Of a DNA stretch of 64,000 nt, positions 3,324 to 56,119 are shown in pieces. Below the pieces are notes generated by a model. The model saw nothing but the letters and a program-made list of their open reading frames with translations. It had not been told where the DNA came from and did not search any database. A program made the position numbers and the translations under genes. The stretch is from Euprymna scolopes (Eukaryota): assembly GCA_053919585.1 (NCBI GenBank), contig CM132789.1. The stretch is one strand, 5' to 3'. Numbering within the stretch: the first letter of the stretch is position 1; each line of letters starts with the position of its first letter.

Positions 3324-3411
3324 TGGCCAAGGTCCATCTGAAGCTGATATTAATTTACTCGATACAGCAAGGAAAATTGAACAGTATGGAATCCGAAATT
3401 TTCCAGCAAAG
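3324..3411 (+). CDS. FARP: FARP/Cdep exon, FERM domain (GQGPSEADINLLDTARKIEQYGIRNFPAK)
   Basis: tttcag| acceptor, AAG|gtagct donor; 1+87 nt open; resembles the band 4.1/FARP1 FERM segment [29 protein letters not shown]. Confidence 0.93.
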
Positions 3412-7001: not shown

Positions 7002-7157
7002 GACCATGAAGGAGTACATTTGAGCTTGGCTGTTGCACATATGGGAATTGTTGTTTTCCAAAATTTTACAAGAATAAACACATTTTCTTGGGCAAAAATA
7101 AGAAAATTAAGTTTTAAACGTAAAAAATTTCTCATCAAACTTCATCCTGAAAATTAT
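7002..7157 (+). CDS. FARP: FARP/Cdep exon, FERM C-lobe ([52 protein letters not shown])
   Basis: tttcag| and |gtgagt; phase 0/0; contains the [23 protein letters not shown] signature. Confidence 0.96.
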
Positions 7158-9477: not shown

Positions 9478-12400
9478 GATCTTATTTTGGATTATTTGGA
9501 TTCTTCAGTTTACTGTTTTCATCTTGAGTGTTATTTTCACAACATTTCAATTGATGTAACCTCCAACCTTCTTCAGGAATATTTTTGTTGAACTCAGGAA
9601 TCTGCACAGAATTTGAAATAGAACCGACCTTGTCGAGTGGGCATTAGAATACCTTCAATTCGGCCATTTGTTGATTGTGGGTGGCGATTCATGATGCTTA
9701 AGGATGGGATTCTGGTGATTGAGCAGATCATGCCCAGGACATCATAAAGATATAAACTGCAGCATACCACTTTGGCCTTTACTTGGGCTAGACAGGGGGT
9801 TGAATAGATCTGATTCAATCAATCAGTTGGTCACATCTAGCTCTAACTTTCCACATTATATGATAAACTGATTTAGTAAGCCGTGGCTGAAGGGTCAAAC
9901 TACTTGACAGATAATGAACCCAACACGGCAAACATATTTTTTCTAAAAAGAAACTTAGAAGTAAATGGAAGAACCACGGATGCTTGGATCCACCAAAGGG
10001 TAGAGTATACCCTTCCTATATCCCTATTGTGTTGGGATGAATGGATTTTCCTCTCAACATCTCCCACATAGGGCTCTGAGGGTAGTGGGGAGCAGGAGAG
10101 ATGAACAAAAGCACAAAATTATGTACAACAATCAGCCTCATAAAAAAAAAAATCATTCTGAAGTTACGGATCTTACTAGTTCAGACCCAGAAATCGAAAT
10201 GAAATATAAAAGCACAAACTTCCCAACATACATAGTGATGGAAAACTCTGTTAAAAAAATATCAATTTTCAAAATAGAAAATAATATTCTACAAAAGTAT
10301 CAAAAAAAAAAAAAAACTAAACAACAGCACAATACTAATTGAAATAACAAATAGAAAACAAGCAAAAAAAAAAAAGCAGAAGAGCTACTAAAATGAAAAC
10401 AATTTGAGAATACAGCAATCAAAACTTAACCACATAAAACACTAAACTCGAGCAAAAACAAAATAAAAAGTTCTGAACTATCACTATGCACAATGGAAGA
10501 AATGAAGGACACTCTCAAAACACAAAATGTTACAGATGTACAAAGAATACAAAGAAGAAAAACAAATTATATTCACTAATACATAATCCTAACTTTTGAT
10601 ACCCCCCCTCCTGCCAAATTCTCCAAAATATCAAAATAGGATATCTGATAATAAACACAGAACCATACATCTTTAACCCTCTAAGATGTCACAATTGTCA
10701 AAGATCTAGACATCATTGTGACCAATATACACCCCTCCCTCAACATGCATAAGATGCGTGGAGGGAAAATAGATTCACACAAAGAATGCAAAAATAAATT
10801 TAAATGCGTTAATTGCAATGAAACTCAATGGGAAAACTCCAAAAATTACCCTATTTGGAGAAAAGAAAAAGGGACCCTCAAAATAAAATGCACCAAAAAC
10901 ATTATGTTCTTGAAAACATTAGAAAACACCAATTATGCAGAAATAAATAAAAGAAACCTATCAAATACTAACATACCCAAATCACCATACAAAAGCAATA
11001 AACCAATGTGAAGATGTCACAAAACTCTTAAATCAAATGAAAAATTTACTAGAATTAAAAAAAAAAACACAAACTAAATTAATAGTGAAAACAAAATCTA
11101 CCCAAATAAAAACCAAAATATGACTTAACATCGGATTTAATAAAAAACCAAACCAAAAATATACACAAAACCACAAACTGCAACTACTTCTACACAAACA
11201 GTTATCCCCATGAAATTGGAGGGGGGGGGGCGAATCACACCAAAAGCAATAAAATCATCACCCAACAACAAAGAACCTAAATCCAAAAGAAGGAAAACAT
11301 TGATCTGTATCAATTATCTAAAATAAAAATTCCTTTCCAAAATCAAATTCAGGCAATGGATACAGAAAATGAAAGACCAGACCCCCCCCCTCCCCCCCCA
11401 AAGAAATAAAAAAAGTAAAGAGAAAAACATCCACAACATTACACTACAACTACCCACATCCTTCATATTACTAAGAGACTTTAATTTCCACGGCCGAATA
11501 TGGAGTGGCAGTGAAATCAACCAAAAGAGCAAATTCATCAAAAGTTTCATAAACAAAAATAACCTATGCATTTACAACAACCAATCGTCAACACTTGGGT
11601 AAATATTCAACAATAGACCTAACCTTATATGATTGGTCCGTCCTAATGGACTTTTCATGGTCAACACACAATGATACGTGTGCAAATAACCACTTCCTTA
11701 TGATCCTAGAAGGTCTGAATACCAATCCAAAAGACAAAATTCCAAATTGGAACCTCAAAAAAGAAAACTTGAACAAATTTACAACAATTTGTTCCACAGA
11801 ACTAACTCCCAACTCAAACACCAAAAACCAAGATCAAATTACATACTTCACCATAACAATAACTTTCATAGCAGAAAAATGTATCCCTGAATTTTCTAAA
11901 TGCACCAAACATAACTATTCTTGGTTCAATGAAGAATGCCGAAAAGCTATCAAACTATGCAAAGCTGTTCTACACAAATTCAACGTGCATCCAACAGCAG
12001 AAACTAAAATTCTTTCAAAATATGCAGAACCAAAAGTATAACAAATAATTAAATAATCTAAATGTTCTACATAGAAAAAAATCATATCCAAAATTAACTC
12101 TAACACAAAAACATAAACTGTGTGAAATACGATCAGAAAAATTGCTGTCAAAAACACAACTACCCCTCTCAAACATCTAAACAACAATACAAAAGTAACT
12201 GACCCCAAATTGCCAATACATTTGCCCAATACTTTGAACAAAACTCTTCTGCTACAAACCACAATAAGAAATTTCAGAACTTGAAAAACAATAATGAAAA
12301 GATAAAACTGGACTTTCACTCAAAAATAAAAAAATACAATTTCCCTTTTACCTTCACTGAATTACAGAACACCTTAGTTGGACCTGACAACATATACTAT

Positions 12401-14627
12401 GAATTCCTTAAACAATTTGCAGATCCTTCTATGAAATACCTACTAAAGATCATGAACAATATCTGGATTAGTGGAAAAATACCCAATCTCTGAAAATAAG
12501 CAAATATTATCATCCTCCATACCCAAAAGTGAAAAAGACTTATCAAACCCCTCCAGCTATAGTCATCTGCCTAACCAATTGTTTATATAAAACCGTAGAG
12601 AGAATGGTCTAAGACTAATTTGGACTCTAGAAATCAACAACCTACTAACTGACTTTCAAGCTGGTTACAGAAAAGACGAAGCACAGTTAACCACTTGATC
12701 CACTTAGAAACAGTTATCAGAAATGCTTTCATCAAAAAAGAACATTTAATTGCATTTTTTTTTTTTTTTTTTTAAATCTCAAAAAGGCATTTGACATTAC
12801 ATAGCAATATGGTATAATGTTAGAACTTAACAAATTCGGACTCAAAGGTAAGCTACCAACATTCATGGAAAATTTTATATCCACCCATTTCTTTTTATGG
12901 GAAACCCCTTTCTGAAATCTACAAGCAGGAAATGGAAATACTACAGGGAAGTATATTATCAACCACACTTTTCAATATCCAAATGAGCAGCATTGTCAAA
13001 ATTCTGGATCCCAGGTTGGAACCTTTTCTATATGTCAATGATTTTCTCATTTGTTACAAATCAAAACCTATCCACACTATTAAACAATGTCTCAACAAGA
13101 TTAGCGAATTGTTCAACATAAATGGGTTCAAATTTTCCCAGACAAAAACTAAGTGTTTACATTTTTGTCAACAAAAGCTACATCTTCATCCTTTTCTCAA
13201 ACTTAATAATAAAGAAATATCCACAGTTGAAAAACATAAATTCTTAGGCATAATCTTCAACAAAAAATTCACATGCAAAGCACATGTAAATGACCTCAGA
13301 ACTAAATGTAATAAAATAGTACAGTTAATGAGAGTAATAACCAATACAAACTTATGAACACATAAAAATCCTACTAAAAAATATACAAATCGCTTGTCAG
13401 ATAGAAGCAAGACTTTGCCAGCTTCATTTATGGATCTGCAAGGAAATTTTATTTAAGAGAATTGGAAACAATTCACAACCAAGGACTCAGAATGGTTCTA
13501 AGAATTTACAGAACTTCATCAACAGTATGTATGCAGAAGCCTTCAAATACCAGTCTCCTTGAGACAAGAAAGAGTAGTACTTCAGTACTACATTAAACAC
13601 ATACTGTGTCTTCACCCCAAAATAAACCTCTTCAACAAAGAAAAAAATGCCATAAAAACCTATGGAACACAAACAGAACACCTACTAACTAGAAAATTGT
13701 CTTATAGATAAAAACGTTCACAAATTCAAATTTCCAGAAAACCCTCCATGGTTACTAAAACAACCAAAACTCATCCTTCACTTAACAAAATATTCCAACT
13801 CTGATATGCACCCTGCAATCTGTATAGACAATCTCAAGAATATATTAGGACAATACCCAAACTGGACATGCATATACACAGATGGATCTAAAGACCTGAA
13901 CAAAATCAACTGTATTTAACAATATCATACTACAAAAACGCTTTCCAGGCAACAGCTCAATTTTCAATGCTGAAACAACAGCAATAGAATTAGCCTTGGA
14001 TATCAGCCTTTAAACCAACTCAAACAAGTACATAATACTTTCAAATTCCTTATCAGTTTTAATGTCACTAAAAATCAAAGACTTAAACAAGCCCCTAATC
14101 ATAAATCTTTTACAAAGAGTTAATTATGTCTCCCGAAACACAAACATCATCATAAGACTCAAAAATTTTTTTAAAATGATCACTAGCAATACAAAAGTAC
14201 CCTGTACAGACTTCTAAACAACAAAAATATCATATCTAAATGGCAGAAGTCATAGAATTCCTGCAAAAACAATAAACTCTATCAAATTAAACCCAACCTC
14301 AAAGAAAAAACAAGACAAAATCTCTAATTATAAGATGGCAAGAAGGGAGTAGTAATAGCAAGTCTCCAAATAAGATACACTGCTATGACACACTCGTACC
14401 TACTAAAGGGCAAAGAAGCACCAATCTGTATCCCATGTCCAGAACCGTATATCATAGAACATATTCAAAGATCTCCAACAAATATGAAAAAAATGTTACC
14501 AAAGAAACAATCTAAAAGACCTTTTCCGCAATCTCCTAATAATACAAATTAACAATCTTCTAGAGTTAAAAAGAAAACACCTAGCATACAACTAACACTT
14601 ATCAAAGTGTAATAATCACACTAAGAG

Positions 14628-15385: not shown

Positions 15386-15546
15386 GGTTACTACAAAGAC
15401 ATAGTTGAATTTTTCTTTGACAGCCGAAATGAATGCAAAGGATTTTGGAAAAAATGTATAGAACACCATGCATTTTTCCGCTGTCACACTGTTAAGAAAC
15501 TCCCCCGTAATAAAACCCGAGTTGTTAGCCGAGGATCTTCCTATAG
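15386..15546 (+). CDS. FARP: FARP/Cdep exon, end of FERM / start of FA (GYYKDIVEFFFDSRNECKGFWKKCIEHHAFFRCHTVKKLPRNKTRVVSRGSSYR)
   Basis: ttttag| and AG|gtttgt; CKxFWKxCIEHHAFFR and SRGSSxR motifs; phase 0/2. Confidence 0.96.
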
Positions 15547-16823: not shown

Positions 16824-16898
16824 GTATAGTGGTAAAACACAGAAGCAACTGATGGAATATGTCCGGGAGAATTATTTTAAAAAGCGGCCATTTGAGAG
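16824..16898 (+). CDS. FARP: FARP/Cdep exon, FERM-adjacent domain (YSGKTQKQLMEYVRENYFKKRPFER)
   Basis: ttacag| and AG|gtttgt; phase 2/2; RYSGKTQKQ...FER FA motif. Confidence 0.95.
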
Positions 16899-18309: not shown

Positions 18310-21300
18310 ATCTGTGAGCGGCCGGATCAGTCGGAGTACGAGTGCAACCCCTAAAAGTCATCAAAAGACGACTACTCTGAACTCTTCTGACTTTCATGTA
18401 AGTCAGAATAGTACTGCCTCCAGCGGCTCACAAATCTTGGCCGATACTACCCAGGAGAGTAATCATGTATTGCCATCGTCTCGGGTAGAAACTGCTGAGG
18501 TGCACAGTGAGAGTTCCTTGTCAGGCAGCCGCTCCTTGGGATCACCAAAGCTGGATTCGGCTCGCAGCCATAGTCAGCCAGCCATCACTTTGGAGCAGGA
18601 TGGGAACAGGAATGACCACCAGGCTCCGGGCAGTTCTCCACACAACACTGACAACAAAGTGGAGTCCAGTGATCATGTCCATGGCAAAATTGCCAAATCG
18701 GATTTGAATGGTATATCCGTTAGCTTAAGTTCTGATAGGCAGCAAACATTGTCAGCCAATCAAAATGCAAATGACAATGCTGGAAATCATAATTTATCTT
18801 CAATTTTGAGTACATCTAGTAACAGTGGTAAAGAGAAGGGTCCGAAAAAAAGTTGCGATTCTAGTGACACCTCCACACACATTCTGAAATCGGTACATTT
18901 TATGAGTGATGTTATCGATAAAAATGGTAATGCTGATAGTACTGATGACATTCCACTTCAGACAATTCCCCGTAGCAACAGGTTTGATAATATCTCTGAC
19001 ATAGGAGAAGATTACGATTACGACTACCAAAGTGACGATGACGATAGTGACGATCAGAGTGATGACGATGACGATCATAGCGATGATGAAGGCTCAGTTG
19101 ACAAACTCGAGTATAACGTGTCTTTAGAGGAAATAGCTAGTCATGAGGACATAAATAGGCGTGATAGTCCTCTGACTATAGAGAAACTATCTGCAGAAAG
19201 GGATCAGTTAAGGGGTCATAGGAGAATGGGAAGTAAAGAGCGTGTACTTACATGGAATATAGCAGAGATGTCTTTAGAAGGAACTAGTGGGGAAAATGAT
19301 TGGGAAAGACTAGACAGTGGAGAGATTATTGATATGATAGAAAATGATGGTCCTAGTGATTGGGATGGTGGAGAGCTTTACCTAAATTTAGACACAAAAG
19401 ACTCTAAAGGCATAGAGGATGAAAGTGATGAACTTTCTAGTTCTCCTGCTGTGCAGGATGTGATGTTCAGTTTGGGAGTCCCTACTGATGAATCTAGTGA
19501 ACTTATTACGGAGACAGACACAAGTCCAACTGCTGATGAGATGGTCGAGGAAGGTGGAGAAGATTCAGTTCCCTTTGAAAACATTCCACCTTTGCCTCCA
19601 AGTTCGTCTTTTAGTGAAAGTTCAAAGGTTATAGATGATCTGTTGCCCAAATCGGATTCAGGTATATCTGGTATCGAGGACAGCAGAATAAGTTGCAGTT
19701 TGGAGACGGAGGAAGAAGACAGGTTGCACGAGATTCTTAGACAAGTTGATTCCGGTGAAGAACTGGATAAATCACCTGCTGAAAGGGAAACCCTCAATTT
19801 TCCTTCATCAAATCGAGATTTTAACTCTGAAAATAATCGAAAGGATGACAAAATGCCCCGGCATGCAAAAAAATCAAAAGAAAAACCCGATAGCAACCGA
19901 CAGAATCTTGATAACGATACAAGCAACAAGCTGCTGTCGTCATCCCAACCTTTTGAAGATAATAAATCCACTTCTCATAATGTCTTGAATAACATTTCCA
20001 ATTTGACTAATGAAAATAAGCTGAATAAATACAATAAACCCAATAGTTTTGTCAATGGCAGTGACCTTATCAAAGACATTCCATATATATTGCATCGTCG
20101 ACTCAAAATTGATAAGGAGTTGAAAGATGAAACTGAATTATTTGCTCTAACAGAAACTGAATGCCACAATGTCCAAACAGTTGAGAGCAAACTATCTTCT
20201 TCTCTTCTGCTTGAGCAGCTCAATTTGAACAATGAATGCCAATCTCAACGGAAGTCAAGAGGCCCATCACCTAACCGAAGATCCCCATCATGCAGAACTC
20301 CTAAGGATCATTCTCCGGCCAGTCCCCGTCGATTTGAATTAGTCAGTTACAATAAACTTCCTCCTAAAACAAGTTATTCCAGTATCGATGATACAACTAG
20401 CCCTTCATTAGAAAAAGAAATTTTAGAACAAATCCAAAAGCGGGCCCAGAAAGAAAATAATGAAAAAAATAAAAAAAGTGAAATCACTGCTGGTAAAGAA
20501 GACAATGAATTGGTTGACACTGTGGTAGGGAACACAGAATTTGTTACCTACCGAAAACTTCCAGCTAAGGACAGTTTTTCCAGCCTTGACCATACAACCA
20601 GTCCTACAGTTGAGAGTGATATAGAGAAACATAGACTCACAGTAGGTCAAATGTCAGTTGAGTCTGAACATCTAAATGATAATGATGCAGAGATAAAGTC
20701 AAGTGAACTGCCAGAGCAATCAGTGGACACTTCAGTCCACCTTGTAAAAGGATTAAGAGGTCTACCCGAACCAGCCAGTGTGGCATCTATCAAGAGAACG
20801 ATTGTTGAAGATGAAAATTCTGAGGTTAAATCAACCGAGGTCTCAACTCCAAGCCAACAAGAAATTGATTTATATCTTCTCTCTTCATCTACTGCTGATG
20901 ATGATGATGATGATGATGAACAAATAATTGATACTACTACTACTACTACTACAGCATTATTACACCAAGAGCCTAGATTTGGTGGACTGTTATTGGACTT
21001 AAACGATGACTGTAATAGCAATGAGGCAGCCAGCAATAATGACAATGACCGCAATCACTTCAACAACGATCCTGCTTCTGTTGCTGCTCTGATTCTAAGT
21101 CAAGATATTGACACAGAACCGAATGAGCGCAAGATAACTTTTAGCACCTTCAAACCACCTCCACCATCGCCAGGGTCTTTGATTGGAGATGAGTCTGAAG
21201 GGAGTTCAAAGATAAATTCTGCTAACCCGAAGAGCAGCAACAGTCTTGTTAAGCAAGATTCAGTTGTGTCTCTTGGTAAACCTTTGACCACAATTACTGA

Positions 21301-22285
21301 AGAAGAGAGCACCACAGATTCATCCAGAGCACAGTCCGATGAAATGACCCAAAAATTGTCCGGCTCTTTGAGGCGACGGAACCTTTCCTGTGAATTTGCA
21401 CTGCCACGACGACACAGTGCTACTGATGATGCAGATGATTCTAGTTTAGCCGACAGCCAGTTAGAAGATGAATCATTTGATGTGCACGATTTATTAGAGC
21501 CGTTGGAACATCTTCAAACAGATGATGATTCAGAAGAAGACTTTAATGGAAGTAGTACGTCTTTTACAAGAGATAGTGAAACGAGTGAAGCATGCTCAAA
21601 CTCATTTTTGGCCTCCAACCGAAGGGCATTGTCCCATCCAGCATCAAACAGTTCCAGTGAGAGCTCCTCATCAGGTGAATCAGATTATGAAAATAGGAAA
21701 AAACTCTTGAACATCGATCCATTAGCTGAACTCGAGAACCTTGATATGACAAAATTAGAATCGAGCGACGATGATGAAATTACAGAGAATAAAACTTCTG
21801 ACTACATGTGCACATTGGCCCCTGCTGCTTCTACTGCAGCAACTGTGTCAGAGTACAGAATGACTGCCAGCTCTCATCATGATGATGACGATGATCCTAA
21901 AAATGCTACAGCTCCTAAATTGGACGCTGCTCGATGTGTAAAGGCAGGATCTCATTCTAAAAGTACATTTGAAATAGAACGGACTCGGGTGGTTGAGCTT
22001 AATTTGGAGATTTCAACTGAAAATCCATGTGGAAGGTCAATTTCTATGGAAAGCACCTACAAGAGAGTCGTCTTTTGTGAGTCCTCCTCAGATAATACAG
22101 ATTTCCAAGAAACGGATAGTTCTGCAGCTGTTAGCTCTCCAGATAGTGCCCAACTGTCCCCTCTCACCCCAGACAACGCAGTTGGTGGAAATTCAGAAAA
22201 AGAACAACGAACAAGTGCTGTTTACCAAAATCCGTATGCAGAAACTGTCCTCAGGCAAGAATTGAACTTCTCACCCTCACAATGA
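18310..22285 (+). CDS. FARP: FARP exon after the FA domain, read through as a giant terminal exon (~1320 aa acidic/Ser-rich low-complexity tail); the canonical isoform must leave it at an internal donor
   Basis: Polypyrimidine tract + ttttcag| at 18309, phase 2 in frame with the previous exon (R-SVSGRISR...); 1323-codon ORF with higher GC than the introns; TGA at 22283-22285; AATAAA at 22707-22712. Candidate internal donors include 18398 (gtaagt, phase 0) and 18711 (G|gtatat, phase 1, compatible with exon 47035). Confidence 0.85.
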
Positions 22286-24138
22286 GCAAAACACAAGGAA
22301 TTTTCATTTATTTTAATTTATTTGATAAAATGTCACAACAAAATCACACAGATTTTACACATTCCAATTTTTTATTTCGTTTTTTTTTTCTCCCTGAGAG
22401 TCTTTTTTTCTTTTTTTCTAAAGAAATATTTTCAGCATATTTAGAAGACTTCCCCCTTTTTTTCTCACTGTCTTTTAAATTTCTCTATAAAACACAAACT
22501 TAACACTTGTAATTTCACATCAAGCTACAATGTATTATAAGGTTTCAGATTGTATATAGAGTAAGAATAATACATTTGTGCAAATGTTTGTCAATAAGTT
22601 TCATTCTACTTACATGCAATTTTGGATTGATTAATATAATCGGTGAAGCTCTCCCCATCTTATGTCCATTTTACTTATAACATTTTAATGATTTTTCATT
22701 TTGAACAATAAATATCTGATAATTTATTTAAAATCTAGATCAAACAATATTTATAAAATTTTTAAGTTTCTATAATATTTTGTGTGACAGAAAATCTAAG
22801 TCTGCAATGGTTTGCATTTTTTTATTTTTTTTTTGTCTTAAATCTGTAAATATTTTCTCTCAAATAACCTGATTAAGATGAGTAACTATTTCTGTTAATG
22901 AACATAAACAGTCTTGCTGCTCCATATAATCAAACGATTAGCTAACACTTACAATCTTATTTTCTACTATTGTTGTTTGTGTTTTTATTCAAGAGGAACA
23001 TTAATTCCTTGAAATGTGTTAAGATTCAAAGATTTCGTTCAAATTGACTCAAAGAACCTATACATGCGAGGAATAATAATGAATTTCTCTTATATAAACT
23101 GATTTTAAAAAACACCCCACTTAAAAAAAAAAGCAAAAGAAAAGAAAACAATTATTTCAAGCTGTTAAAATGATAAATTGAAAACCAGTTCACTTTATTA
23201 TGAAGTAATTTTTCAAATTGACTTTCCAAGAAACATAATTGTTATTTTTGTAAGCAAACTGCAGTTACATTTAACATGATTTTCTCTGACTGTTTAATGT
23301 TTACACAAATAGCAGCATGCTCATGATTCTTTGAATGTTGATAGTTAAGTGACAATTAATAAGAAATCAGATTTCTTAATTGTCAGTAAATAGACATTTT
23401 TTGCTCACGTATAGTTTTAAGCTAATCTTTTAATATTTTTATTTGCTTCATTTCAAAAGTTTGTGAAATTATATAACTCTACTATGCAAAGAGATTCTTC
23501 ATCAATTACATTACTCATCACCTGTATCCTAAGAAAGTGTATATTATAAACAAGAGAACTTAGGGAATATGACCATTTTGTATGGACTTTCCATTGCCGA
23601 AGTCAGATTCTAGTTGTTTCTGACTTTTGATCTTCAAGCCCCCTTTGCTGCTTATCTCTCTTTCTCTGACTGTGTTTTCTCAGTCAGTCGAGGGAACTCA
23701 TTTGCTAACAACAAAACAAGAGTAAATGCCACAGTTTAGGAGCAGAACTTTCCAATTCAAATTTTCTTACATAAGTGCAATTTATTTAATCTTGGCAGTT
23801 TCTATTTTTTACTAAGGTTGAAGTTTAATTCAATCGTTAATAATAAGCGGATGTTAAGAATGGACGACTCTCAATTATTGGTGCTTTTTTCTGACGTGAT
23901 GGAGAAGGAAGTTTTTCATCACAAATGGCTGTTAAAAAATGTATATCTTTTCTTTACATATGGACTGAGAGGGAAAGGAACATTCTTTGAATATAGACAT
24001 ACTAACTGTTCAGATCTCATTAGATTTTAATACATTCTATTTTAATATAGATCGGTTTAGTCTACTTTAAATTCATTTCTTTTATAAACTATTAAACTAA
24101 TTGTTTCATTTGTAAGGATTTATAAGGAAAAAGAAACC

Positions 24139-34160: not shown

Positions 34161-34349
34161 NNNNNNNNNNNNNNNNNNNNNNNNNNNNNNNNNNNNNNNN
34201 NNNNNNNNNNNNNNNNNNNNNNNNNNNNNNNNNNNNNNNNNNNNNNNNNNNNNNNNNNNNNNNNNNNNNNNNNNNNNNNNNNNNNNNNNNNNNNNNNNNN
34301 NNNNNNNNNNNNNNNNNNNNNNNNNNNNNNNNNNNNNNNNNNNNNNNNN
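34161..34349. other. Assembly gap (189 N)
   Basis: Run of n. Confidence 1.
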
Positions 34350-47034: not shown

Positions 47035-47218
47035 GTTCCCTGAATAACGGTGATGTAAGAGATTCTTCCAGCTTCCTGATGGACCGTAAATACTCTGAGC
47101 CAATCCTTAGTCAAAATGAAAGCATTGAAGACAATGCCATTATACGTTCTAACAAGGTAGAGAATATTCCAGAACACATACGAGAGACTCCGGAACCAAC
47201 CTCACCCAATAAACATAG
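47035..47218 (+). CDS. FARP: FARP linker exon (GSLNNGDVRDSSSFLMDRKYSEPILSQ...PEPTSPNKHR)
   Basis: gttgtag| and AG|gtaaga; phase 1/2; end phase matches exon 54685; coding-like composition. Confidence 0.78.
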
Positions 47219-56029: not shown

Positions 56030-56119
56030 CGTGCCCCAACTGACAAATCCTACTGCATTACCAAAGAACTGTTGATGACAGAAAGGACATTCAAGAAGGA
56101 TTTAGAAGTTGTTACACAG
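56030..56119 (+). CDS. FARP: FARP DH (RhoGEF) exon 1 (RAPTDKSYCITKELLMTERTFKKDLEVVTQ)
   Basis: ttatag| and CAG|gtgaga; resembles FARP1 RFPTDKAYFIAKEVSTTERTYLKDLEV (DH CR1). Confidence 0.96.

What the first reader, a model, noticed from the sequence alone, without database searches (positions are those of the whole stretch)
18310..22285. FARP gene hides a ~4-kb read-through terminal exon giving a GEF-less FERM protein with a ~1320-aa disordered tail
Seen: the ORF begins in frame at a proper acceptor after the FA exon, stays open for 1323 codons in very AT-rich DNA and stops ~34 kb before the first DH exon. Known: FARP proteins are FERM-FA-linker-DH-PH-PH. Inference: a choice between an internal 5' splice site (e.g. 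18711, giving ...KSDLNG|SLNNGD... with exon 47035) and intronic polyadenylation switches the gene between a RhoGEF and a large FERM-anchored acidic scaffold.
Basis: partly seen in the sequence, partly recalled or inferred. Interest (0 to 1): 0.72.

Follow-up and report, generated by a model that had tools for sequence, protein, structure and literature searches.

The report
GEF-less long-tailed FARP isoform exon
In a cuttlefish or squid FARP gene, the exon after the FERM-adjacent region can be read past its usual splice donor for about 1190 more codons to a conserved stop. The same layout occurs in snails, oysters and scallops and predicts a FERM protein with a long disordered tail in place of the Rho-GEF module, though the mRNA's 3' end was not seen here.

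Summary
A splice acceptor proven by mRNA opens an exon at 18310. It stays open for 1324 codons to a TGA at 22283-22285, 33.7 kb before the first DH exon.

The 1190 codons past that donor are real coding sequence:
- dN/dS is 0.13-0.16 in three cephalopods.
- All indels between the window and the second species are in frame.
- Identity is 0.69 at third codon positions against 0.88-0.90 at the first two.
- The stop lies at the same place in all three.
- The upstream intron does not align.

Homologous giant ORFs follow the same linker exon in gastropods and bivalves. In an oyster, the public annotation already lists two products from one start: FERM-FA-RhoGEF-PH and FERM-FA-tail.

AlphaFold gives the tail a mean pLDDT of 39 with one helix. 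About ten short motifs are conserved across Mollusca.

Not shown in this species are the poly(A) site and an RNA joining the FA exon to the read-through. An abalone model uses the tail as an internal exon, so that form may also exist.

It is unnamed in the literature but already present as unnamed or misnamed database models.

The parts
16824..16898 (+). FA-domain exon that splices into the exon studied here
   Evidence: The GT-AG junction 16898|18310 is present in mRNA contigs L004 and L005.
18310..18710 (+). Linker part shared by both forms. This is the whole exon in the ordinary FERM-FA-DH-PH-PH mRNA.
   Evidence: It is 99.8% identical to L004 and L005 and is joined to 47035. dN/dS is 0.12 with dS 0.32.
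18711..18716 (+). Alternative 5' splice site GTATAT, identical in three cephalopods and the weakest donor of the gene
   Evidence: A simple consensus score gives 2.7, against 3.4-12.3 for ten other donors of the gene. Its conservation is shown.
18711..22285 (+). Read-through extension: 1190 codons plus a TGA stop, encoding the acidic, mostly disordered tail
   Evidence: The frame is open. dN/dS is 0.13-0.16 in three species pairs. All indels between the window and L001 are in frame. Homologues exist across Mollusca. Mean pLDDT is 39.
18752..18778 (+). SANQNANDN motif, 14 codons past the donor, kept in cephalopods, gastropods and bivalves
   Evidence: Seen in the protein sequences and in the consensus. 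The DNA here is nearly identical in three cephalopods.
20063..20101 (+). DLIxDIPYILHRR motif with invariant I, Y, L, R and R
   Evidence: Alignment A1 of 15 mollusc sequences. There is a local pLDDT bump.
20312..20476 (+). SPxxxRRxELVxxxKLPxKxSYSSxDDTTSP motif followed by the only confidently predicted helix
   Evidence: Invariant columns S668 to D694. The helix covers tail residues 564-587, with block pLDDT up to 90.
20537..20605 (+). Weaker second copy of the KLPxKxS(Y/F)SS motif, seen only in the cephalopods
   Evidence: Direct reading. The other molluscs show one copy.
21068..21160 (+). DxPSPAAA-like motif and TFSTFKP motif
   Evidence: Invariant D920, F944, T946, F947 and P950.
21434..21742 (+). 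Two acidic leucine motifs, DxLExLExL and DPLxxLExL
   Evidence: Nearly invariant D1060, L1065, D1136 and P1137. Small pLDDT peaks.
22220..22285 (+). Conserved C-terminus VYQNPYAE...Q and the stop codon
   Evidence: The stop lies at the same position in L001 and L003: TGA here, TAG there. VYQNPYAD also ends the distant homologue P0010.
22286..22740 (+). Candidate 3' UTR with the first AATAAA at 22707-22712 (not validated)
   Evidence: Hexamer scan. The flank has patchy colinear conservation with L003 out to about +1.4 kb, while the upstream intron has none. The hexamer itself is not conserved.
47035..47218 (+). Next exon of the GEF isoform, the acceptor for donor 18710
   Evidence: mRNA contigs L004 and L005.
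56030..56119 (+). First DH (RhoGEF) exon of the GEF isoform
   Evidence: mRNA mapping. P0003 carries PF00621.

Best explanation
The exon at 18310 is a composite exon of a mollusc FARP gene.

If its weak donor at 18710 is used, the exon is a 401-base internal exon. The mRNA then goes on to the DH-PH-PH exons and gives the ordinary 1135-aa Rho-GEF. This step is shown.

If the donor is skipped, translation continues in the same frame for 1190 codons to a conserved stop at 22283-22285. The transcript most likely ends at a poly(A) site in the next 0.5-1.5 kb. This step is inferred.

The second product keeps the FERM and FA modules, which dock on membranes and receptors. It replaces the catalytic module with an acidic, serine-rich, mostly disordered tail of about 1190 residues. 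The tail carries about ten short motifs conserved since the common ancestor of cephalopods, gastropods and bivalves.

The product most likely works as a FERM-anchored scaffold. It could also compete with the GEF isoform for the same docking sites. Its partners are unknown.
For: Shown:
- The acceptor at 18310 and the junction 18710|47035 are present in two same-species mRNA contigs.
- The ORF is open for 1324 codons.
- Tail dN/dS is 0.16 for window vs L001, with dS 0.76, and 0.13 in three pairwise comparisons. This includes the last 150 codons at 0.23-0.41.
- Identity at codon positions 1, 2 and 3 is 0.88, 0.90 and 0.69 (phase corrected).
- All indels between the window and L001 sum to multiples of three.
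- Nucleotide identity is 0.82 in the tail against about 0.61, barely alignable, in the upstream intron.
- The stop position and the C-terminal motif are conserved.
- The locus is single-copy in the 5.9-Gb genome.

Comparative:
- An exhaustive HMMER search found tail homologues in Bulinus, Biomphalaria, Haliotis, Mizuhopecten and Saccostrea.
- In the oyster, one locus has two annotated products from the same start: FERM-FA-RhoGEF-PH and FERM-FA-tail. The tail is a single 961-codon last exon that begins at RSVSGRIS.
- The Bulinus model is FERM-FA-tail with no DH/PH.
- In the scallop, a 1421-codon ORF is continuous with the linker exon inside the FARP gene.

Expression:
- 19 runs from 8 studies hold at least half of the sampled words of 18311-22700.
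- One is an oligo-dT RNA-seq run, with a share of 0.65.
- Eleven more of only 46-293 million letters, which the tool only guesses to be RNA, hold 0.73-0.93. That is hard to get from DNA of a 5.9-Gb genome (my inference).

Disorder:
- Mean pLDDT is 39, with 1109 of 1190 residues below 50 and one helix.
- Net charge is -124 and S+T make up 22%.
- Pfam finds nothing.

The donor at 18710 is the weakest in the gene. Synonymous change is halved around it.
Against: - No read-level RNA evidence could be obtained in this species. So there is no junction read linking 16898|18310 to sequence past 18710, no coverage profile and no poly(A) site.
- The only canonical hexamer nearby, AATAAA at 22707, is not conserved in L003.
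- No assembled FERM-plus-tail protein from any cephalopod is in the protein collections.
- The cephalopod contigs that carry the whole ORF (L001, L002) include intron sequence upstream, so they look genomic or unspliced.
- The third cephalopod assembly (L003) has two single-base insertions in the last 270 codons. Selection looks unchanged beyond them, so they are probably assembly errors.
- Several frame-compatible GT sites lie inside the tail, for example 21674 and 22076. An abalone model splices out of the homologous ORF into the DH-PH exons.
Confidence: 0.75

Rival explanations
1. Giant internal exon. The tail, or most of it, is spliced from a donor near its end into exon 47035. The product would be a FARP of about 2300 aa that keeps DH-PH-PH, with the tail as an insert between FA and DH. 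The stop would never be used.
For: The Haliotis rubra RefSeq model XP_046568871.1 (P0022) is FERM-FA-tail-RhoGEF-PH-PH. It leaves the giant ORF three codons before that ORF's stop. The window has frame-compatible, conserved GT sites at 21674 (CAG|GTGAAT) and 22076 (TTT|GTGAGT). A protein of that length would have fallen just outside the length window.
Against: The abalone model is flagged LOW QUALITY and needs a frame change inside the exon. In the cephalopods the codons after both candidate donors are still under purifying selection, with omega 0.2-0.4. The stop and the VYQNPYAE end are conserved, also in the distant P0010. The oyster, Bulinus and scallop models end at the stop. No such long protein turned up in the exhaustive search. 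This form may coexist as a minor isoform.
Confidence: 0.12
2. Separate nested gene. The tail is made from its own promoter inside the FARP intron, starting at an internal ATG, without the FERM-FA part.
For: The scallop RefSeq annotation models it this way: XP_021358601.1, a single exon nested inside the FARP gene. The cephalopod contigs L001 and L002 carry about 480 bases of intron in front of the ORF.
Against: The frame is continuous with the spliced linker exon in cephalopod, oyster and scallop. The first in-frame ATG of the window ORF is at residue 197. Residues 135-196, including the cross-class SANQNANDN motif, are nevertheless conserved as protein. The oyster and Bulinus models attach the tail to FERM-FA.
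Confidence: 0.07
3. Chance or decaying open frame in a retained intron, with no protein made.
For: No Pfam family matches and the composition is low in complexity. No direct proteomic or read evidence was obtained here.
Against: The tail has dN/dS of 0.13-0.16, a codon-position pattern of substitution and in-frame indels. Motif-level conservation spans three mollusc classes. The chance probability of the open frame is below 1e-30.
Confidence: 0.01

Closest known systems
FARP1/FARP2 (FERM, ARHGEF and pleckstrin domain proteins; Drosophila Cdep)
   Same: The gene is a FARP orthologue. Its spliced mRNA encodes FERM_N-FERM_M-FERM_C-FA-RhoGEF-PH-PH, 1135 aa. A cluster mate of the related cuttlefish protein is named FARP2 / FARP1 in Acanthosepion pharaonis.
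   Different: The product discussed here drops DH-PH-PH and adds a tail of about 1190 aa that matches no Pfam family. Papers holding FARP1 or FARP2 together with 'truncated isoform', 'short isoform' or 'alternative polyadenylation' were ranked and none of the top-listed concerned a FARP isoform. No paper holds FARP1 with 'intronic polyadenylation'.
FRMD7 (vertebrate paralogue of FARP1/2)
   Same: The architecture is the same: FERM plus FA followed by a long C-terminal region without known homology and without DH/PH. FARP1 and FARP2 are its closest homologues (PMC3163398).
   Different: FRMD7 is a separate gene of 714 residues. Here the GEF-less protein is an alternative product of the FARP gene itself, and its tail is about three times longer. 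Homology between the two tails could not be tested, because no FRMD7 sequence was reachable with these tools.
Composite terminal exons: a splice donor competing with an intronic poly(A) site, as in the immunoglobulin mu secreted/membrane switch (from general knowledge)
   Same: One acceptor serves an exon that is either cut short at an internal donor or read on to a stop within what is otherwise intron. The two choices give proteins with different C-terminal modules.
   Different: The poly(A) site is not mapped here. The read-through part is unusually long, at 3.6 kb of coding sequence, and old, being shared by three mollusc classes.
Unnamed or misnamed mollusc database entries
   Same: Their tails are homologous and share the same motifs. 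The oyster entry is the same isoform design. The entries are:
- Saccostrea XP_062582355.1, 'uncharacterized protein isoform X1'
- Bulinus KAH9513865.1, 'hypothetical protein'
- Biomphalaria KAK6963040.1 and KAI8770719.1
- Mizuhopecten XP_021358601.1, 'unc-89-like'
- Haliotis asinina XP_067669934.1, 'uro-adherence factor A-like'
   Different: They are only 20-33% identical to the cephalopod tail. The cephalopods have a second copy of the KLPxK motif. The annotations disagree on whether the tail is an isoform, a nested gene or an internal exon.

Membership tests
FARP (FERM-FA-DH-PH-PH Rho-GEF) gene | FERM (N, M, C lobes) and FA domains at the N-terminus | tested here: met
   P0003 carries PF09379, PF00373, PF09380 and PF08736. 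Its mRNA contig maps at 99-100% to window exons ending at 3411 and at 7002-7157, 15386-15546 and 16824-16898.
FARP (FERM-FA-DH-PH-PH Rho-GEF) gene | DH (RhoGEF) domain followed by two PH domains in the same transcript | tested here: met
   P0003 carries PF00621, PF22697 and PF00169. The DH exons map to the window from 56030 onward. This holds for the spliced isoform only. The read-through product lacks these domains by construction.
Composite terminal exon / intronic polyadenylation isoform | Same 3' splice site as the internal exon, with an internal 5' splice site that can be used or skipped | tested here: inconclusive
   Use of the acceptor at 18310 and the donor at 18710 is proven. Skipping is supported only indirectly, by selection on the extension, by RNA-run word shares and by the oyster model.
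Composite terminal exon / intronic polyadenylation isoform | In-frame stop in the extension | tested here: met
   TGA at 22283-22285, at the same position in L001 and L003.
Composite terminal exon / intronic polyadenylation isoform | A functional cleavage and polyadenylation site downstream of that stop, inside the intron | not testable with these tools
   The only evidence is an AATAAA at 22707, not conserved in L003, and patchy 3'-flank conservation.
FRMD7-like (GEF-less FERM-FA protein) | FERM-FA followed by a long C-terminal region with no DH/PH | tested here: inconclusive
   This is predicted for the read-through product and annotated in oyster and Bulinus. It is not demonstrated as an RNA or protein in this species.
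FRMD7-like (GEF-less FERM-FA protein) | Orthology, or tail homology, to vertebrate FRMD7 | not tested
   No FRMD7 sequence was available. The single-sequence exhaustive search listed 15 hits.
Intrinsically disordered region with short linear motifs | Low predicted order, biased composition, and islands of conservation in fast-evolving sequence | tested here: met
   Mean pLDDT is 39 and 93% of residues are below 50. Composition is S 15.5%, D 10.8% and E 9.7%. There are 20 invariant columns clustered in five motifs among 15 sequences with 25% mean identity.

The most novel reading that the evidence does not exclude
The FARP locus of molluscs, and perhaps of the bilaterian ancestor, is a two-product gene: a Rho-GEF and an FRMD7-like GEF-less scaffold. 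Vertebrate FRMD7 would then be the second product, fixed as a gene of its own after duplication. The conserved tail motifs would define an unrecognised set of partners for FERM-anchored signalling.
Probability: 0.15. Interest if true: 0.7.

Novelty: new variant of a known kind. Interest (0 to 1): 0.5.

Why it matters
FARP proteins couple plexin/semaphorin and SynCAM signals to Rac and Cdc42 at membranes in neurons (PMC4388020, PMC6041286).

A conserved second product keeps the docking module but swaps the enzyme for a motif-studded tail of more than 1000 residues. One gene could therefore either activate Rho GTPases at a receptor or occupy that receptor with a scaffold.

The arrangement has been kept across three mollusc classes, and in cephalopods the tail evolves under purifying selection at about the same strength as the shared linker exon (dN/dS 0.13-0.16 against 0.12). 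It mirrors what vertebrates do with a separate gene, FRMD7, whose tail is also unexplained.

There is a practical point as well. Several RefSeq entries for this ORF carry misleading names or split the gene, and these could be corrected.

Tried and rejected
**Reads**
- I masked or skipped them in local scripts.
- As a result there is no coverage profile, junction or 3'-end evidence.

**Protein and sequence look-ups that found nothing useful**
- Word searches for shorter fragments of the ORF from transcript contigs found no cephalopod fragment (450 aa, C-terminal 300 aa).
- An exact look-up of the ORF product found nothing. The gene caller writes M for the GTG start, so this was expected.
- Pfam on the ORF gave no family.
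- The ESM Atlas feature search gave only sub-threshold look-alikes of disordered proteins.

**Literature**
- Four searches found no description of a GEF-less FARP isoform or of this tail.

**Ideas considered and dropped**
- I considered that the frameshifts in L003 mean the C-terminus is dispensable. I rejected this because omega stays at 0.05-0.3 beyond them.
- I considered a GC donor at CAG|GCAAGA just before the stop. I rejected it because its phase gives a stop four codons into exon 47035 (my reading).

- I built and searched no joined FERM-plus-tail protein. Exons were handled by reference only.
Full report
**The observation**

The ORF listing gives one very long frame, 18314..22285 +, with 1323 aa. 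Stop to stop it is 1332 codons. The next longest + strand frame in the 64 kb window is 177 codons, inside a retrotransposon. G+C is 0.39-0.41 in the ORF and 0.26-0.30 around it.

The frame begins right after a good acceptor...tttctctggttttcag|A at 18310. It ends at TGA 22283-22285.

**The gene and its ordinary mRNA**

A word search with the ORF found proteins of 1132-1135 aa with FERM_N, FERM_M, FERM_C, FA, RhoGEF and PH domains. These match only the first 10-12% of the ORF.

One of them, P0003, sits on two 4.1-kb Logan contigs, L004 and L005, from SRR24189493 and SRR24189505. These contigs are spliced mRNAs of the window's own species. They map at 99-100% identity to 13 exons of the window.

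With GT-AG refinement the junctions include 16898|18310 and 18710|47035. The junction gives ...KSDLNG|SLNNGD as predicted. The first DH exon starts at 56030, 33.7 kb after the stop.

**Is the extension coding?**

Two other cephalopods carry the whole ORF:
- L001 and L002 (Logan ERR12921341 and ERR12921339). The ordinary FARP of this species clusters at 90% or more with Acanthosepion pharaonis FARP2.
- L003 (ENA ERZ21867824, a 354-kb contig).

The ORF in L001 is open for 1378 codons and is 75% identical as protein.

Between the window and L001, every indel or adjacent indel group is a multiple of three.

| Region | Nucleotide identity |
|---|---|
| Shared head | 0.91 |
| Tail | 0.82 |
| First 175 bases after the stop | 0.71 |
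| Intron in front of the acceptor | about 0.61, gap-ridden |

Apart from the exons, nothing upstream aligns with L003.

| Nei-Gojobori measure, window vs L001 | Head | Tail |
|---|---|---|
| dN/dS | 0.12 | 0.16 |
| dS | 0.32 | 0.76 |

Blocks of 100 codons range from 0.016 to 0.45. All three species pairs give 0.13 for most of the tail. Identity by codon position is 0.88, 0.90 and 0.69 (phase corrected).

The stop is at the same place in all three species, and the last 25 residues are almost unchanged.

L003 has two single-base insertions, after window 21479 and 21808. Read in the window's frame, omega stays at 0.05-0.30 beyond them, so they are probably assembly errors.

The ORF is single-copy in the 5.9-Gb genome.

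**Relatives outside cephalopods**

Pfam finds nothing in the ORF. An exhaustive HMMER search with the 1190-aa extension found 15 proteins. The named ones are all molluscs:

| Species | Accession | Length or name |
|---|---|---|
| Bulinus truncatus | KAH9513865.1 | 1758 aa |
| Biomphalaria glabrata | KAK6963040.1 and KAI8770719.1 | |
| Haliotis asinina | XP_067669934.1 | 'uro-adherence factor A-like' |
| Haliotis rubra | XP_046568871.1 | 1993 aa, LOW QUALITY |
| Mizuhopecten yessoensis | XP_021358601.1 | 'unc-89-like' |
| Saccostrea cucullata | XP_062582355.1 | 'uncharacterized protein isoform X1' |

Domain content and locus structure tell the story:
- **Bulinus** is FERM_M-FERM_C-FA plus tail with no DH/PH.
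- **Oyster** is FERM_M-FERM_C-FA plus tail. At that locus the collection records two products from the same start. One is FERM-FA-RhoGEF-PH and runs on. The other is FERM-FA-tail and stops. Its last exon is a single 961-codon stretch that begins at RSVSGRIS, the start of the linker exon.
- **Scallop** has a 1421-codon frame continuous with the linker exon inside the FARP gene. RefSeq models only its ATG-initiated part, as a nested gene.
- **Abalone** has a model that runs FERM-FA-tail-RhoGEF-PH-PH and leaves the giant frame three codons before its stop. It also needs a frame change inside the exon.

The arrangement therefore predates the split of the three classes. Annotators have read it three different ways.

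**What the tail looks like**

It is acidic, with 243 D+E against 119 K+R and a net charge of -124. S+T make up 22%, and only 21% of residues are hydrophobic.

AlphaFold2 with the 15-sequence alignment gives a mean pLDDT of 39. Of 1190 residues, 1109 are below 50. There is a single confident helix, at ORF residues 698-721.

Across 15 mollusc sequences with 25% mean identity, invariant residues cluster in short motifs.
- DLIxDIPYILHRR
- SPxxxRRxELVxxxKLPxKxSYSSxDDTTSP, with a weaker second copy in cephalopods
- DxPSPAAA
- TFSTFKP
- Two acidic leucine motifs, DxLExLExL and DPLxxLExL
- SANQNANDN, just past the donor
- VYQNPYAE at the C-terminus, shared with P0010

The acidic leucine motifs recall paxillin LD motifs, and YQN recalls a Grb2-type SH2 site. 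Both are recollections, not tests.

**Expression**

The run search on 18311-22700 listed 19 runs from 8 studies holding at least half of the sampled words.
- One run is labelled oligo-dT RNA-seq, with a share of 0.65.
- Eleven more are only 46-293 million letters in size yet hold 0.73-0.93.
- The shared head is only 9% of the stretch, so the ordinary mRNA cannot explain these shares.
- Random DNA of a 5.9-Gb genome at that size could not explain them either.

I take this as good but indirect evidence that the extension, and at least 400 bases after its stop, are present in RNA.

It does not distinguish mature mRNA from retained intron. It also does not show the 5' exons or the 3' end. I sent nothing from those places to any search tool afterwards.

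**Splice choice**

On a simple consensus score, ATG|GTATAT at 18710 scores 2.7. The other ten donors of the gene score 3.4-12.3.

Synonymous divergence is halved in the head and for about 170 bases past the donor. The 60 bases after the donor are nearly identical in the three cephalopods.

Both fit a regulated alternative donor. The same bases also encode a conserved peptide motif, so the two constraints cannot be separated here.

**The 3' end**

The first AATAAA is at 22707, 422 bases after the stop. It is not conserved in L003, although the block around it is. Colinear conserved patches reach about 1.4 kb after the stop. The site remains open.

**Internal or terminal exon?**

Frame-compatible, conserved GT sites exist inside the tail at 21674 and 22076, and the abalone model shows that an internal-exon reading is conceivable.

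Against it as the main form:
- Codons after those sites are still constrained.
- The stop and the C-terminal motif are conserved.
- The oyster, snail and scallop models end at the stop.
- No protein of about 2300 aa appeared in the exhaustive search.

I put 0.75 on the terminal GEF-less form, 0.12 on the internal exon as the main form, 0.07 on a nested independent gene and 0.01 on no protein.

**Comparison and novelty**

The gene is a FARP orthologue, and the mechanism is the known composite-terminal-exon design.

By product, the nearest thing is vertebrate FRMD7. It has FERM-FA plus a long tail with no known homology, and FARP1 and FARP2 are its closest relatives (PMC3163398). I could not test tail homology to FRMD7.

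Four literature searches found no description of a GEF-less FARP isoform or of this tail. The ORF is, however, already in public databases for other molluscs, unnamed or misnamed.

I therefore class it as a new variant of a known kind. It is solid as a coding feature and moderately interesting. The isoform structure in this species still needs confirmation by RNA.

I built and searched no joined FERM-plus-tail sequence.

A bookkeeping note: the window coordinates printed are one too low. The coordinates in this report are corrected.

Noticed in passing
window 10000-14550: An A-rich non-LTR retrotransposon remnant on the + strand, with reverse-transcriptase-like open frames of up to 177 codons. 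It lies in the intron between FERM exons 7002-7157 and 15386-15546.
   Followed up: no
window 18311-18890: Synonymous divergence is about half that of the rest of the ORF: dS 0.31-0.37 against 0.6-1.4. The 60 bases after the alternative donor are nearly identical in three cephalopods. This is a candidate control region for the splice choice, and it overlaps the conserved SANQNANDN peptide.
   Followed up: partly
L003:12530 and L003:12880 (approximate; after window 21479 and 21808): Two single-base insertions break the frame in the third cephalopod assembly. Protein-level constraint continues beyond them to the shared stop, so they are probably assembly errors.
   Followed up: yes
L009:9464-13726 and L008:17735-20617: RefSeq names for the homologous ORF are misleading: 'unc-89-like' in the scallop and 'uro-adherence factor A-like' in Haliotis asinina. 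The scallop model is a nested single-exon gene that starts at an internal ATG, although the frame is continuous with the FARP linker exon.
   Followed up: partly
L010:58313-61380: The Haliotis rubra model leaves the giant frame three codons before its stop and needs a frame change between 58600 and 58765. This may be a real distal donor or an artefact of a low-quality model.
   Followed up: partly
window 20537-20605: The cephalopods carry a second, weaker copy of the KLPxKxS(Y/F)SS...TTSP motif about 70 residues after the first. The other molluscs examined show one copy.
   Followed up: no
window 34161-34349: A run of 189 N (masked or gap).
   Followed up: no
It was not examined or sent anywhere afterwards.
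   Followed up: no
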